Assembly: GCF_035594765.1 (NCBI RefSeq)
Contig: NC_085846.1
Span: forward strand, 18,339,190 to 18,403,189
Length of the DNA stretch: 64,000 bases
Reading direction: 5' to 3'
From: Anolis carolinensis
Taxonomy: Eukaryota
Shown: piece by piece, positions 27,571 to 41,026 of the stretch
Layout: every line of letters begins with the position of its first letter
How positions within the stretch are numbered: the stretch's first letter is position 1
The notes under the pieces: generated by a model
Database searches by the model: none
The model's input: the letters and a program-made list of their open reading frames with translations, nothing else
What the model was told of the DNA's origin: nothing
Made by a program: the position numbers and the translations under genes

Positions 27571-28589
27571 TACAAATACAGGTATCAGAAAATCTGGAAA
27601 AAAATCCAGTATCCAAATCAGGCTCAGTATTTTGGATAAGGATGCCAACTTGTACTGTATAGGCCAAGTCTTTTGCGTAGAGTTTGATGCCATATTGCTA
27701 CCATCTTGGTTCAATTGTGTCTCCATCCGTGAAGGAGTACTCCTCATGGAGTCATCAGGAATACCATTAGTCCCAAACATTCACTGGGGTTAAGGACACA
27801 AGACCCCTGTGAAAGTGAAAAGGCACATAATAAGAAATTGCTGGGCTTGTTTACTTGAGAGAACACATGCCTAGAATTTTTTTAAGTTCTTCCTAGAAGC
27901 TGACCAAAAATCACCTGAGAATCTAGACAGGTGTTCTGTCTAGAAATCCAGCATGACTGCAGGAAGTTGACTATAGGGTCACACTCGCAGACCTGGTAAT
28001 TTCTAGAGAGAACATTTTAATCAATGTGAAAAATTAAGTCAGTGAATAATCAAATCCACAAGACAAAACAGTGAATGTGGAGGGATGACTTTATTATGGA
28101 GCTGTGTTGACACAATGGGTGAAAGCCTTGTGCCAGCTGGACTTCTGACCTGAAGGTTGGGTTGCTGACCTGAAAGTTGCCAGTTTGAATTTGTGAAATG
28201 GGGTGAGCTCCCGTCTGTCAGCTCTAGCTTGCAGGGACATGAGAGAAGCCTCGCAACAGGATGGTAACACATTCAGGCATCCCATGGGCACGGCCAATTC
28301 TCTCACACCAGAAGTGACTTGTAGTATGTTCTCAAGACACTTCTAACAGGATTAAAAAAAATCTTTATTATGAATTTTATTGAATATGGAATATGCATGA
28401 AAAAACAGTTCCCTTCTTGCTCAGTACTGAGGAAAATGATAAGTGGACATACCAGAATTTAAACCACGATAGGAACGGTGCCAGGCAGACACTGACACCC
28501 CCGTTATCGTGGGATGCCAGTGGGTATTTGCCGTGTCTGTTGATGATACAGGTCAACACCCAACACCATTCCCTCTTGACTTGTTGACT

Positions 28590-28600
28590 CTCATATAAGG
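28590..28600 (+). promoter_or_regulatory. TATA-like box of the IgV gene
   Basis: CATATAAG about 50 bp upstream of the ATG at 28643. Confidence 0.45.
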
Positions 28601-28642
28601 TGCATTTACCATTTCTAGAAGAGCTGAAGCCACCTTCAAAAA

Positions 28643-30722
28643 ATGGACATCTTGCCATTGATCTTTCTTGCTGCCTTTTGCTGCCTTGGAAATGCCAGTG
28701 AGTTCTTGTTTAAACAATAATTCCTGCTTGTATTCGTGTTAGTGTTTAACAAGCTGTGCATTGTGTTTACTTGGGTTGCTGATTGATTTTTGGTAAACCT
28801 CTAAAAATAGTTTAAACATATTTATTATACCAACTTTCTTCCAATTCTCTATATTATTTTGAGTGCTATTAGTCATTACAACTTGATTAGCCACCCAGCC
28901 TTAAATGTCATATTACGAGTAACATAATTGCTTGTGACTTGTTACTTCAGAGACCTTTACTGTTGTGTGCCTTAGAGTAGTTTCTGACTTATGGGGACCC
29001 TACGGTGACTCTACCACAGGGTTTTATTTGGCAAGATTTCTTTATGTCTTCCATTGTCATTGTTTCCCATTGAGGCTGAGTGTGTGTGACCTGTCCATGG
29101 CTGAGTAGGGATTGGAAACCTGGTCTCCAGAATCATAGTCCAATACTCTCAAACTACTACACTGGTTCTAGAAGTTGACCATAAGGTTGCATAGGAGTGT
29201 ATAGAGATTCCCAGAAAGAATCAGCAAAAGTCAAACCCACAAATGTGAGGTTGACCTTAATAAAGTTTATGTAGCTGAAAATTATTTCAAGGGTTCCTCT
29301 GGGGTTCACAACAGCTTTAACCAGCTGTAGCATTTTATCCCTTGGATTTCTTTTAATTCCAAACCTACACTGAAATAGGGACAATGCTGGCTCTCATGCA
29401 TTTTTATTTTGTACTCTTTCATGCGTCCTGACCAGCCAAGAAGCTCCATGTGCAGACAGATCCTTCCCTGGTGAAAGCTGCAGTGGGTGATGATGTTTTG
29501 CTGGATTGCAGGTTTACCGTCAATGCGACGACACTGGACCTCAGCCTTTTCTCAATCTTGTGGTTTCACCGGGGCAAACAATTGGCAGAGTTTGATGACA
29601 CAGTGACTGTGTTCAAGCAAGGAATCAGCCTGAACAAGGAAGAGCTGGTGAAGGGCAATGCTTCCCTGGCCATCTCCCAGGTTTCAGCCGAAAACTCTGG
29701 CAAATACAGATGTTACGTCACATATTCACCAGAGGTTGTCATCAGAGAAGTAACTTTGCAAGTTGATGGTAAGAGAGTCGATAGTGGGTTGGTAGCGAGG
29801 CAAGAGTGGGTACGTTTAACAAATTAGGACTGGAAGCCCTTACACAGTAAGGTTGCACCTAAATGGTAGAATTAATGTAGTTTGGCACCACTTAAACTGC
29901 TATGACTCAATGCAATGGAATCCTGGGATTCTATAGCATTGTTGAGGCACCAGGCAGAGAAGGCTAAAGACCTTATAAAACTACAATTCACATTATTCTA
30001 TAGCATTAAGCCATGTTGGTATAACACTGCATTAATTCTACAGGGCAGATGTCCCCTTAGGCCCCTTCTACACTGCCATATAATCCAGATTACCAACACA
30101 GATAATCCACATAATCTGCTTTGACCTGGATTATATGAGCCTACACTGTGATATAATCCAGTTCAAAGTAGATAATCTGGATTTCATAAACAGTTTAGAA
30201 GGGCCTTAGTGTCCCTCAATATCACACAGCAGTGGAATATCGAGAAAGAAATGACACTTATCTCTTGGTGCATATGTGCCTTCGAGTGCCTGTTGACTTA
30301 TGTCAGTTTGAAAGCAATGAATACTTAAGAGTTGGCTTTGCCAGTTCTTTCCACTGAAATGCAACCTACTGCATCAGTTATTCCTTGGCAATACCCCATC
30401 CAAGTACTGACCAGAGCTCACCCTGCTTAGCTTTCAAGATCAAACAGGATCTGGTGCTTTGGGTCAATGAATTTCCAGCATTGTGTGTGTGTTTGTCATC
30501 TTTTTTCTATTTTCCGCAGACCCCTTGCAGAAACAGGAGGATGATCTGGAAGAGGATTCTTTTCTCTCCAGACCGTGTTTTGGCCGTTCGGAGATCCTGA
30601 GCAAGCTGGATCAGATCACCATAGCTTTGGATCAACTCATGGCAACCCTCCAGGAGTTTGTGAGCAGCAAGGCTGTCAACGGATGCCGTTCTGACGTAGC
30701 CTCCCAGGAGCCCCTGGGCTAA
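28643..30722 (+). CDS. Predicted secreted single IgV-domain protein, B7-H6/NCR3LG1-like, with a C-terminal coiled coil (196 aa)
   Basis: Exon 28643-28697: signal peptide MDILPLIFLAAFCCLGNA. Exon 29436-29768: V-set domain (DVLLDCRF, ILWF, GNASLAISQVSAENSGKYRCYVTYSPE). Exon 30520-30722: acidic linker plus heptad tail, TAA. Phase-1 introns, 591 nt in frame, AATAAA at 30828. Confidence 0.85.
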
Positions 30723-31760
30723 TTCCGTTTCTTCTCTCCCATGCATTAAAATGGATTTCAGTCCCATTTAGTTTCAATCTTCCTGGGACCATAGTACATA
30801 CCATTATGTTACATATATAGGATAGCTAATAAACCATTCTTGCTGTGCTGCATTTCCTAGGATTCTCAGCCTCTGAGTAATATATCCATTAAATCTGCTT
30901 TGTAGTAGATTAAATAAAGAGTGTGTCCTGATTCTGTTTGCATAGACAGGAATGTGGCGAGGTTGGGATCAAAGCATTTTCTGAAATGGAGTACTGTATG
31001 ACCCCTGAATTTATGTGAGAGGTATTCCCAGATACACAAAGCCACAGATAATAGCAAACCCTATGGAAATGAAGGACTTATGGCGCAAGGAACAATAGAA
31101 TGGCACTGGAGGATCACAATGTTGTTGTACATTGATAAATAACACTGTGGATACTGGGATCATACTGTCCTATATACCAGGATTTTGGGGAGGAATGGAA
31201 GCAGGGCAATGAGACAGAGATTTTGGGGCAGATAACTCCTGGTACATGCCTGTTGTACGGCATTCAATAAACTACTCACTTAATACCTAACTAGAACAAA
31301 CAATCTTAGGGGATGAAGTCTAACATCACTGAGCATTGTCATGTTTATTTTAACAGAAAATTTACATTGGTACCTATTCAGAAAACAATATTCATAATGT
31401 GAGTTATTTATCTAATCTGCCAAATCGGTATTATATAGCAAGGAAAAGTCAGGTAGGTAAATTATGTGTAGATGGCCTCATCAAAACTGCCACATAATGC
31501 AGTTTCAGAATGCATTGAAATGCATTATATGGCAGCGTAGTCTCATATAATACAATTCAATGCAGTGAAACTGCACTATGAAACTGCATTATATGACAGT
31601 GTAGATGAGGCGTAAGTAATGAAATGGAATGTACAAAAATCTAAGAAGGGAAGAATCAAATACATACCCGGCTGAACTAATTCTAGGGATCAGTTTACAC
31701 TAATACAGTTTGATATCATTTTAACTGCAATGGCTCAATGCTATGGAATCATAGGAGTTG

Positions 31761-32876
31761 AACGGCCTGCCTCAGGGGAGCGTGCTTGCTCCAGAAATGT
31801 TTAACATTTATACAAATGATCAGCCACTGCCTGAAGGGACAGAGAGTTTAATCTATCCTGACGATTGTGCCATCACCACCCAAGCAGGGAGCTTTGAAAT
31901 GGTTAACAGAAGCTCTCTGAAGCTTTAGGTGCTCTTACTGCCTATTACAGGGGAAACCAGCTGATTCCTAATCCATCTAAAATACAGACATGTGCTTTTA
32001 GCCTTAAGAATAGACAAGCATCTCGAGCTTTGAGGATTACCTGGGAAGAAATCTCACTAGAGCATTGCAGCACACCAAAATACCTGGGAGTCACTCTGGG
32101 CTGTGCTCTGACTTATAAGAAGCACTGCTTGACTATTAAGCAAAAAATGGGTGCTAGTCATAGAAATAACATACGAAAGCTGAATGGCACAACCTGGGAA
32201 TCACAACCAGACACAGTGAAGACATCTGCCCTTGCTACTCTGCTGCTGAATACGCATGCCCAGTGTGGAATACATTTCACCACATGAAAACAGTGGATGT
32301 GGCTCTTATTGAGACATGCTGCATTATCACAGGATATCTACACCCTACACCGCTGGAGAAATTATACTGTTTAGCCGATATTGCACCACCTGACATCCGC
32401 TGGGAAGTAGCAGCGGATAATGAAAGGGCCAAGGCATTGACACCTCCAGCCCAACACCTGTTAGGATATTAGCCAGCATGCCAATACCTTAAATCAAGAA
32501 ATAAGTTTTCTGAGATCTACAGAGATACTCACAGGAACATCTCAGCAAGCGAAATCCTGGAACCTCAAGCCATGGCTGATACCGAATGAGAGACTCCCCC
32601 CTGGGCACACAGAAGACTGGGTGACTTGGAAGGCTCTGAACAGACTGGCACCACGAGTGGAGTCCACAACATGCGAGTGTGGAGAAGAGCAAACCACAGA
32701 CCACCTATTACAATGCAGTCTGAGCCCTGCCACATGCACAATGGAGGACTTTCTTACAGTGACACCAGAGGCACTCCAAGTGGCCAGTTACTGGCCAAAG
32801 GACATTTAGTATAATGCCAATTTTTGAACTTTGTGCTTTTAAATATATTAAACTGACACAATAAATAAATAGATAG
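31761..32876 (+). mobile_element. 5'-truncated Vingi (Ingi-group) non-LTR retrotransposon
   Basis: RT motifs GLPQGSVLAP/FNIYTND, PKYLGVTL and a C-terminal CxCG...HLLQC knuckle; (AAAT) tail; 10-bp TSD ATAGGAGTTG at 31751-31760 and 32877-32886. Confidence 0.8.

Positions 32877-33824: not shown

Positions 33825-41026
<7,202 letters not shown>

What the first reader, a model, noticed from the sequence alone, without database searches (positions are those of the whole stretch)
28643..30833. Secreted B7-H6-like single IgV fused to a Cys-flanked coiled coil, immediately downstream of LAT
Seen: a compact intact gene (TATA, signal-peptide exon, V-set exon, terminal exon, AATAAA). There is no IgC domain and no transmembrane segment. 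The last exon encodes an acidic linker (EDDLEED), a Cys, a clean 4-3 heptad I-L-I-L-L-L-F (EILSKLDQITIALDQLMATLQEFV) and a second Cys. Known: B7-family ligands such as B7-H6 are normally membrane IgV+IgC proteins, and Cys-flanked short coiled coils oligomerise secreted proteins such as matrilins and thrombospondins/COMP. Inference: a soluble, disulfide-stabilised multivalent B7-type ligand or decoy, possibly for NKp30- or CD28-family receptors. I do not recognise this architecture in mammals.
Basis: partly seen in the sequence, partly recalled or inferred. Interest (0 to 1): 0.85.

Follow-up and report, generated by a model that had tools for sequence, protein, structure and literature searches.

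The report
Secreted single-IgV B7-like protein with helix tail
This lizard gene is real and expressed, and it belongs to an apparently unstudied family found in amphibians and non-avian reptiles but not in birds or mammals, encoding a secreted B7-type immunoglobulin V domain on a cysteine-flanked helical stalk that probably joins copies into a soluble multivalent ligand.

Summary
A three-exon gene lies at 28643-30722 (+): signal peptide, one B7-type IgV domain, then a terminal exon with an acidic linker, a Cys, a 3.5-heptad amphipathic helix and a second Cys. It sits about 3 kb downstream of LAT.

Contigs of two independent runs carry the exact GT..AG junction 29768/30520. Exon 3 runs on unspliced past the stop codon. 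No IgC or transmembrane exon follows.

The model matches a RefSeq prediction misnamed "PD-L1" (196 aa). The same architecture occurs in squamates, turtles, alligator, salamanders, caecilians and frogs. I found none in birds, mammals or fish.

Seven core helix positions in 4-3 spacing are at least 85% hydrophobic across 26 orthologues. Every complete orthologue keeps at least one tail Cys and lacks a membrane anchor.

Many species keep only the upstream or only the downstream Cys. A parallel, disulfide-linked homo-oligomer is therefore the simplest reading, but this is inferred, not shown.

The V domain is closest to B7-H3 and PD-L1, not specifically to B7-H6. The receptor and the function are unknown. 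I found no paper on the family.

Verdict: a real gene, a new architectural variant within the B7/butyrophilin superfamily, of moderately high interest.

The parts
28594..28599 (+). TATA-like box (TATAAG), 44 nt upstream of the ATG
   Evidence: Sequence read and pattern scan. Function inferred from position only.
28643..28697 (+). Exon 1: start codon and 18-residue signal peptide (hydrophobic core, G-N-A before the likely cleavage site), phase 1, GTGAGT donor
   Evidence: Conserved in A. sagrei (78% aa) and gecko. The junction to exon 2 was not seen in RNA contigs.
29436..29768 (+). Exon 2: single B7-type IgV domain (Cys43-Cys111, sequons N48 and N93)
   Evidence: Pfam V-set 1.2e-9. PDB best matches CD276 and PD-L1. 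AF2 pLDDT >90 and Foldseek PD-L1 IgV, TM 0.8. A run X6 contig equals the exon exactly. dN/dS 0.20 against A. sagrei.
29769..30519 (+). Intron 2 (GT..AG). Contains a very high-copy repeat at about 29990-30235. If retained, the frame runs 19 codons to a stop at 29825-29827, giving a V-only product.
   Evidence: Joint 29768/30520 in runs X4 and X6. Unspliced contigs across both borders are also present. ORF 29450-29827.
30520..30722 (+). Exon 3, coding part: acidic hinge-like linker, Cys149, helix, Cys185, short hydrophilic end, TAA stop
   Evidence: No Pfam family. Conserved in orthologues. Contigs run unspliced from 30519 to 30918 (X4) and 31253 (X6).
30576..30578 (+). Cys149 codon (upstream tail Cys). 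The only tail Cys in turtles and alligator.
30585..30677 (+). Amphipathic helix, residues 152-182, with a/d core I155, L159, I162, L166, L169, L173, F176
   Evidence: AF2 helix with pLDDT 86-95. The Xenopus orthologue has a helix at 143-171. Core columns are 85-100% hydrophobic and b/c/f columns at most 12% across 26 orthologues.
30684..30686 (+). Cys185 codon (downstream tail Cys). The only tail Cys in salamanders, most frogs, Sphaerodactylus and Hemicordylus.
30828..30918 (+). 3' UTR with poly(A) signals: AATAAA at 30828 and ATTAAA/AATAAA at 30909-30918. A further AATAAA lies at 31266.
   Evidence: Contig breaks at 30918 (X4) and 31253 (X6) fit several 3' ends, but contigs cannot show ends.
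22211..25466 (+). Context: 3' exons of LAT carrying YxN motifs, upstream on the same strand
   Evidence: tblastx against the gecko LAT locus. LAT Pfam marks on the upstream gene in A. sagrei and gecko.
33825..41026 (+). Context: ARH1-family (ADP-ribosylglycohydrolase) gene downstream
Evidence: The same neighbour (Pfam ADP_ribosyl_GH) occurs in gecko and loggerhead turtle.

Best explanation
This is a functional, expressed gene of an old tetrapod family. The product is a small secreted glycoprotein of about 178 residues after signal-peptide removal.

It has one B7/butyrophilin-type IgV head, a flexible acidic linker, and a 25-30-residue amphipathic helix with a canonical a/d heptad core and one or two flanking Cys.

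The most likely mechanism is that the helices of two or more chains pair in parallel as a short coiled coil, and the flanking Cys lock them by interchain disulfides. The protein would then circulate as a covalent oligomer (at least a dimer) carrying two or more V heads. It would act as a soluble multivalent ligand, or a decoy, for a cell-surface receptor of the kind that B7 ligands engage.

Shown: the gene structure, the exon 2/3 splice, the lack of a membrane anchor, the V-domain family, the conservation of the heptad core and of at least one Cys, and the phyletic spread.

Inferred: secretion, coiled-coil pairing, interchain disulfides, parallel orientation, and any immune role or receptor.
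For: - Exons, phases and signals are all present.
- The spliced joint 29768/30520 (GT..AG) occurs in contigs of two runs from two studies. Exon 3 continues unspliced past the stop, and there is no loose end at the exon 2 donor.
- No Ig or transmembrane frame lies downstream.
- The model matches a 196-aa RefSeq model: 99% over the V exon, two residues different.
- Orthologues with the same three-part architecture occur in squamates, turtles, alligator, salamanders, caecilians and frogs. Bit scores are at least 108, against at most 80 for anything else.
- The V-domain tree groups them (support 90/87) and follows the species tree.
- The tail is encoded by one terminal exon in lizards, gecko, turtle and alligator.
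- Synteny is LAT > this gene > ARH in Anolis and gecko, LAT > this gene in A. sagrei, and ARH within 10 kb in a turtle.
- Seven a/d columns are 85-100% V/I/L/M/F/W/Y, while b/c/f columns are at most 12%.
- AF2 gives a confident lone helix after a low-confidence linker, both in Anolis and in Xenopus.
- Every complete orthologue has at least one tail Cys and no hydrophobic tail segment.
- Species with a single tail Cys have an odd number of Cys in the mature chain, which calls for an intermolecular partner. Because either Cys alone suffices in different lineages, a parallel arrangement fits and an antiparallel one does not (my inference).
- Precedent: the human secreted PD-L1 splice variant dimerises through a single tail Cys and is more active than the monomer (PMC6426808).
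Against: - The helix has only about 3.5 heptads, which is marginal for an autonomous coiled coil.
- No oligomer prediction or experiment was possible.
- Several e/g positions are also hydrophobic, which could equally mean a higher-order bundle or docking on a different partner.
- dN/dS of the Cys-to-Cys segment between A. carolinensis and one A. sagrei copy is about 0.9, but on only 13 changes. For the whole exon 3 it is 0.40.
- The exon 1/2 junction was not seen, and the two runs are RNA only by inference from the spliced joint.
- The tail has no detectable relative outside the family, so nothing known vouches for its behaviour.
- An immune role rests only on the V-domain family.
Confidence: 0.55

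Rival explanations
1. The tail is a heterotypic docking module. The helix and its free Cys tether the V head covalently to a different protein, such as a membrane or matrix protein with a matching helix. The product would then be a subunit of a mixed complex rather than a homo-oligomer.
For: Most orthologues have a single unpaired tail Cys. The helix is short and has extra hydrophobic e/g positions. In both AF2 monomer models the helix follows a low-confidence linker and the pTM is only 0.56-0.61.
Against: No candidate partner was found. Tandem paralogues in Xenopus and A. sagrei would allow only within-family mixing. Homotypic pairing is the simpler reading of a symmetric a/d core.
Confidence: 0.2
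2. The protein is a monomeric secreted V domain. The helix folds back on the V domain or stays solitary, and where two tail Cys exist they pair within the chain.
For: Anolis has an even number of Cys. Intron-2-retaining transcripts that would give a V-only product exist here and are annotated in other species.
Against: A continuous 31-residue helix keeps Cys149 and Cys185 about 45-50 Å apart (my estimate from the helix length). Most orthologues have only one tail Cys. The strict conservation of an exposed hydrophobic stripe over roughly 350 million years argues for a buried interface.
Confidence: 0.12
3. The three-exon model is an artefact. The V exon would really belong to a conventional membrane B7/butyrophilin gene, or the locus would be a decaying pseudogene.
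For: The exon 1/2 junction was not seen in contigs. RefSeq names the product PD-L1.
Against: The spliced exon 2/3 joint occurs in two studies and exon 3 is terminal. No downstream Ig or transmembrane frames exist. All frames are intact. The same architecture appears in more than 30 species. dN/dS of the V exon is 0.20.
Confidence: 0.03

Closest known systems
B7-H3 (CD276) and PD-L1 (CD274) IgV domains
   Same: They are the best sequence and fold matches of the V exon: profile against PDB 4.7e-17 and 2.7e-15, Foldseek TM about 0.8. They share the canonical Cys pair and the G-x-Y-x-C motif.
   Different: Both are type I membrane proteins with IgV plus IgC (B7-H3 often VCVC). Here there is no IgC domain, no membrane anchor, and a helical tail instead. 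Identity is only about 25-29%.
B7-H6 (NCR3LG1)
   Same: It is a B7-family V domain. Bat and shark B7-H6 are among the nearest non-family hits (46-53 bits). Several orthologues are auto-named 'NCR3LG1-like'.
   Different: It is a weaker match than B7-H3 or PD-L1 (7e-5 in PDB), lies outside the family clade, and has IgV, IgC, a transmembrane segment and a signalling tail.
Human secreted PD-L1 splice variant (secPD-L1, PMC6426808)
   Same: It is a B7 ligand without a membrane anchor. A Cys in its short unique tail makes covalent dimers, and these are more active than the monomer. This is the best functional analogue.
   Different: It is a minor splice form of a membrane-protein gene, keeps the IgC domain and has no coiled coil. 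Here the secreted form is the gene's only architecture and is conserved across tetrapods.
Cys-flanked coiled-coil oligomerisation modules of COMP/thrombospondins and matrilins (from my general knowledge)
   Same: They are secreted proteins in which a heptad helix next to Cys residues makes disulfide-locked parallel oligomers.
   Different: There is no sequence relation (no Pfam hit; no relatives). Those coiled coils are longer and carry two adjacent Cys that close rings in trimers to pentamers. Most members here have a single Cys, which by itself can only lock pairs.
Butyrophilins and chicken BG / MOG (from my general knowledge, and PMC6017450 listed but not read)
   Same: They have a B7-related IgV head combined with a heptad coiled coil that dimerises the protein. 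Some orthologues are auto-named MOG-like or BTN2A2-like.
   Different: In those proteins the coiled coil is cytoplasmic, behind a transmembrane segment. Here no such segment exists, so the helix is extracellular. There is no B30.2 domain.
CD28/CTLA-4/ICOS (from my general knowledge)
   Same: They have a single IgV head followed by a stalk Cys that makes a covalent homodimer.
   Different: They are membrane receptors with a different V subtype. The V domain here matches ligands, not receptors.

Membership tests
B7 ligand family (CD80/86, PD-L1/2, B7-H3, B7-H4, B7-H6, ICOSLG, HHLA2) | N-terminal B7-type IgV domain | tested here: met
   Pfam V-set. Best PDB sequence and fold matches are CD276, PD-L1, VTCN1, PD-L2 and B7-H6.
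B7 ligand family | Membrane-proximal IgC domain | tested here: not met
   The protein ends 85 residues after the V-domain Cys. Exon 3 is terminal in the RNA contigs. There is no Ig frame downstream. None of the orthologues has one.
B7 ligand family | Type I transmembrane anchor | tested here: not met
   Highest 19-residue Kyte-Doolittle mean in the tail is 0.94 in Anolis and at most 1.1 in all canonical orthologues. The C-terminus is hydrophilic, so a GPI signal is unlikely.
B7 ligand family | Binds a CD28-family or NCR-type receptor | not testable with these tools
   No binding data. Needs a receptor screen.
Butyrophilin / BG / MOG group | IgV head plus transmembrane segment (plus cytoplasmic coiled coil and/or B30.2) | tested here: not met
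   The IgV is related (BTN1A1 3e-5, BTN2A1 2.7e-8), but there is no transmembrane segment and no B30.2 domain.
Disulfide-locked coiled-coil oligomers (COMP / matrilin type) | Heptad a/d hydrophobic repeat | tested here: met
   Seven consecutive a/d columns are 85-100% hydrophobic in 26 orthologues. Per-sequence shuffle p is mostly below 0.02.
Disulfide-locked coiled-coil oligomers (COMP / matrilin type) | Cys next to the helix | tested here: met
   There is at least one tail Cys in 26 of 26 aligned members. Which one is kept varies by lineage.
Disulfide-locked coiled-coil oligomers (COMP / matrilin type) | Sequence homology to the COMP or matrilin coiled-coil domains | tested here: not met
   The tail has no Pfam family, no PDB match and no relatives outside the family.
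Disulfide-locked coiled-coil oligomers (COMP / matrilin type) | Forms covalent oligomers | not testable with these tools
   Only monomer structure prediction is available.
The unnamed tetrapod 'IgV + helix tail' family defined here | Signal peptide, one IgV, DP-x-acidic linker, heptad helix with at least one Cys, three exons | tested here: met

The most novel reading that the evidence does not exclude
This is a dedicated gene for a soluble, covalently oligomerised B7-type checkpoint ligand, a cytokine-like 'secreted B7'. It would have arisen by the time of the tetrapod ancestor, would signal through or block a CD28-, PD-1- or NKp30-type receptor in amphibians and non-avian reptiles, and would have been lost independently in birds and mammals. 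Mammals only approximate it by shedding or by rare splice forms.
Probability: 0.25. Interest if true: 0.8.

Novelty: new variant of a known kind. Interest (0 to 1): 0.62.

Why it matters
B7 ligands are textbook membrane proteins that act by cell contact. In mammals, soluble forms arise only by shedding or rare splicing, and a soluble form needs to be multivalent to signal (PMC6426808).

A gene whose only product is a secreted B7-like V head on an oligomerising stalk, conserved from frogs to lizards and crocodilians, would show that contact-free B7 signalling or decoying is an old, selected function in ectothermic tetrapods.

It also gives a tractable system. Xenopus has the gene, so it can be used to find the receptor, to test function, and to ask why birds and mammals appear to lack the gene.

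It corrects misleading database names as well. The products are variously called 'PD-L1', 'NCR3LG1-like', 'tapasin-related', 'MOG-like', 'CD276-like' and 'VTCN1-like'.

Tried and rejected
- An exhaustive single-sequence search with the 66-aa tail found only the Elgaria orthologue. The four other hits were repetitive helical or TPR proteins, which I take as chance matches.
- The nearest non-family proteins (Polypterus, Astyanax 'BTNL2' and a carp tapasin-like protein) align over the V domain only. The carp protein's place inside the family in the tree is a long-branch artefact.
- The fold search against viral proteins gave only generic IgV-plus-helix membrane proteins with large rmsd.
- Long 'isoforms' (Dermochelys X4-X8, Chelonoidis X1, Elgaria X2) are not membrane forms. 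They are read-through of the exon 2 donor into the intron.
- Literature searches by accession, by Xenopus locus name and by keywords found no description of the family. The key B7-evolution paper (PMC3709836) is not held.
- Two of the four runs laid (X12, X21) gave no spliced contigs. X12's contigs cross both splice borders unspliced, like DNA.
- Whole-length analyses used the stored database protein P0001, which differs at two residues (L22P, G151S).
Full report
**1. What is in the sequence**

The stretch 28643-30833 holds a compact three-exon gene on the + strand.
- Exon 1 (28643-28697) encodes an 18-residue signal peptide. It has a hydrophobic core and small residues at -3/-1, and ends in phase 1 at a GTGAGT donor.
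- Exon 2 (29436-29768) encodes 110 whole codons of an immunoglobulin V domain, with the Cys43/Cys111 pair and two N-glycosylation sequons.
- Exon 3 (30520-30722) encodes an acidic, proline-containing linker, Cys149, a helix and Cys185. The helix core residues I155, L159, I162, L166, L169, L173 and F176 follow a strict 4-3 spacing. After Cys185 come eleven hydrophilic residues and TAA.
- A TATAAG lies 44 nt before the ATG. Poly(A) signals lie at 30828, 30909-30918 and 31266.

Whole-length work used the stored database protein P0001.

**2. Is it a real, expressed gene with this architecture?**

I laid contigs of four public runs on 28300-31900.
- Two runs from two different studies (X4 and X6) each contain a contig with the joint 29768/30520 and GT..AG ends.
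- In X6 one contig equals exon 2 exactly (29436-29768).
- In both runs the exon 3 contig starts at the acceptor and continues unspliced through the stop codon, to 30918 in X4 and 31253 in X6.
- No loose end is reported at the exon 2 donor, so nothing suggests splicing of the V exon to other exons.
- Contigs that cross both borders of intron 2 unspliced are present too, so some intron-retaining RNA (or DNA) is in these runs.
- Exon 1 and its junction are not covered by any listed contig. The exon plus its 5' UTR is probably under 100 nt. That junction therefore rests on the splice signals, the phase, and conservation of exon 1 in A. sagrei and a gecko.
- The runs are RNA only by inference from the spliced joint.

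Between the stop codon and the next gene (an ARH1-family gene from 33825) the only open frames are a decayed LINE reverse-transcriptase fragment. There is no Ig or hydrophobic frame. Hydropathy shows no membrane segment after the signal peptide.

**3. What it is related to**

The V exon is a V-set domain.
- Its best solved relatives by sequence are CD276/B7-H3 and PD-L1, then BTN1A1, B7-H6, VTCN1 and PD-L2.
- The AF2 model of P0001 has a high-confidence V domain whose nearest folds are PD-L1 IgV domains, with TM about 0.8.
- So the head is B7/butyrophilin-type, but not specifically B7-H6.

The tail has no Pfam family and no PDB relative. In an exhaustive search of 1.84 billion representatives it has only its own orthologue. 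The four weak extra hits are repetitive helical proteins.

**4. The family**

The window's model matches a 196-aa RefSeq prediction for Anolis carolinensis named 'programmed cell death 1 ligand 1' (99% over the V exon; the two differ at L22P and G151S).

Profile searches found the same signal peptide / V domain / linker / helix protein, 170-215 residues long, in these groups:

| Group | Examples |
|---|---|
| Other squamates | A. sagrei (two copies), Podarcis, Hemicordylus, Elgaria, two geckos |
| Turtles | seven genera |
| Crocodilians | Alligator |
| Salamanders | three genera |
| Caecilians | Geotrypetes (two copies), Rhinatrema |
| Frogs | a dozen, including Xenopus laevis with a tandem pair |

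- Family members score at least 108 bits. The next hits score at most 80 bits and align over the V domain only.
- No bird, mammal or fish member appeared. That search sees only proteins of 108-343 residues that share short words with the query, so this is 'not found', not proof of loss.
- A V-domain tree groups the family (support 90/87). It recovers turtles plus alligator, squamates, salamanders plus frogs, and caecilians, as expected for orthologues. One very long carp branch is misplaced.
- The tail is one terminal exon starting at the same point in lizards, gecko, turtle and alligator.
- The order LAT > this gene > ARH is shared by Anolis and the leopard gecko. LAT > this gene holds in A. 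sagrei. An ARH gene lies within 10 kb in the loggerhead turtle. Alligator and Xenopus have other neighbours.
- The databases name these proteins PD-L1-like, NCR3LG1-like, CD276-like, VTCN1-like, tapasin-related, MOG-like or BTN2A2-like. None of these names fits the architecture.

**5. The tail under comparison**

I examined 26 orthologues.
- Alignment columns 203, 207, 210, 214, 217, 221 and 224 are 85-100% V/I/L/M/F/W/Y. The b, c and f columns between them are at most 12% hydrophobic.
- This is the pattern expected of selection on an amphipathic heptad helix rather than on particular residues.
- The g positions 206 and 220 are mostly Lys. Position 210 (d) is Ile or Val in 25 of 26 sequences.
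- AF2 predicts one long helix after a low-confidence linker, both in Anolis (152-182, pLDDT 86-95) and, independently, in Xenopus (143-171, pLDDT 60-71).
- Between A. carolinensis and A. sagrei, dN/dS is 0.20 for the V exon and 0.40 for exon 3. The Cys-to-Cys segment alone gives about 0.9, on only 13 changes.

Every complete family member has at least one tail Cys, but which one varies:
- Turtles, alligator and Pelodytes keep only the upstream Cys.
- Salamanders, most frogs, Sphaerodactylus and Hemicordylus keep only the downstream one.
- Anolis, several other lizards, ranoid and dendrobatid frogs and caecilians have both.
- Pelodiscus has a hinge-like CPPC, and caecilians have CLC.

**6. How it most likely works**

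- A chain with the Ig pair plus a single extra Cys has a free thiol that needs a partner on another chain.
- A continuous helix of about 30 residues keeps the two Anolis tail Cys too far apart to pair within a chain.
- Because either Cys alone is enough in different lineages, only a parallel arrangement gives every orthologue a like-with-like partner.

I therefore read the tail as a short parallel coiled coil locked by interchain disulfides, giving a soluble protein with at least two V heads.
- A single Cys can only lock pairs.
- The β-branched d positions and the partly hydrophobic e/g positions leave room for a higher-order bundle. That is a weak inference from general coiled-coil rules, not a test.
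- The closest functional precedent is the human secreted PD-L1 splice variant. A single tail Cys makes covalent dimers, and these inhibit T cells better than monomeric soluble PD-L1 (PMC6426808).

Shown: gene structure, the exon 2/3 splice, the absence of an anchor, the V family, conservation of the core and of the Cys, and the phyletic spread. Inferred: secretion, pairing, disulfides, orientation, and any immune role. The receptor is unknown, and the NKp30/CD28 idea is untested.

**7. Rivals**

- The tail docks on a different partner (0.2). A single free Cys and a short helix fit this, but no partner is known.
- A monomer with an intrachain disulfide or a folded-back helix (0.12). Single-Cys orthologues and the conserved exposed hydrophobic stripe argue against it.
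- A mis-modelled membrane B7 or a pseudogene (0.03). This is contradicted by the spliced contigs, the terminal exon, the intact frames and more than 30 orthologues.

**8. Novelty and verdict**

I found no paper on this family. One key review of B7 evolution is not held in the library.
- The gene models already exist in RefSeq, so the gene is not undiscovered, but its architecture and distribution appear undescribed.
- It fails two defining features of B7 ligands, the IgC domain and the membrane anchor. I therefore file it as a new architectural variant within the B7/butyrophilin superfamily, not as a B7 family member in the strict sense.
- Interest is moderately high. The gene is real, expressed and old, appears missing from birds and mammals, and can be tested directly in Xenopus.

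Noticed in passing
window 29769-29827, and P0007, P0025, P0028-P0031: If intron 2 is retained, the frame runs 19 codons to a stop, giving a V-only secreted product without the helix. Contigs crossing the exon 2 donor and exon 3 acceptor unspliced exist in both RNA-like runs. Read-through 'isoforms' of the same kind are annotated in Elgaria, Chelonoidis and Dermochelys. This could be a regulated monomer/oligomer switch, or just pre-mRNA.
   Followed up: partly
window 33825-41026 versus mammalian CD80-ADPRH: This B7-like gene sits next to an ARH1-family gene here, in a gecko and in a turtle. In mammals the B7 gene CD80 lies in the same neighbourhood as ADPRH (sheep gene list in PMC10702769). This may be an old B7-ARH linkage shared by paralogous regions.
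   Followed up: partly
window 29990-30235 (intron 2): A very high-copy repeat. Summed contig depth is in the thousands to tens of thousands in all four runs, with many joints and loose ends at 30056-30092 and 30151-30184.
   Followed up: no
window 31755-32806: A decayed, frame-shifted LINE reverse-transcriptase fragment between this gene and the ARH gene (RVT_1 1.8e-4).
   Followed up: partly
L004 10001-11230 and 18384-19896; P0002/P0003: The family is duplicated in some species. Xenopus laevis has a tandem pair (181 and 179 aa, 7 kb apart), Bombina and Geotrypetes have two copies each, and Anolis sagrei has two copies on one chromosome. The window holds a single copy.
   Followed up: partly
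P0020 (Pelodiscus), P0032/P0035/P0036 (caecilians): There are lineage-specific Cys motifs at the helix ends. The softshell turtle has a CPPC, like an antibody hinge, before the helix. Caecilians have a C-L-C after it. Both would allow more than one interchain bond per chain.
   Followed up: no
window 29444-29446 and 30582-30584: The window differs from the RefSeq protein P0001 at two residues (Leu22 versus Pro, Gly151 versus Ser). A. sagrei agrees with the window at residue 22 in both copies and at residue 151 in one copy. These are probably polymorphisms or assembly differences.
   Followed up: no
L002 17033-17188: There is a weak second V-like match (31% over 52 aa) about 5 kb downstream of the loggerhead turtle orthologue, possibly a further Ig exon or a relic.
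   Followed up: no
L006 (Alligator): The alligator orthologue has different neighbours: a SCAN zinc-finger gene upstream and a zona-pellucida-domain gene downstream. The LAT/ARH linkage is therefore not universal among reptiles.
   Followed up: no
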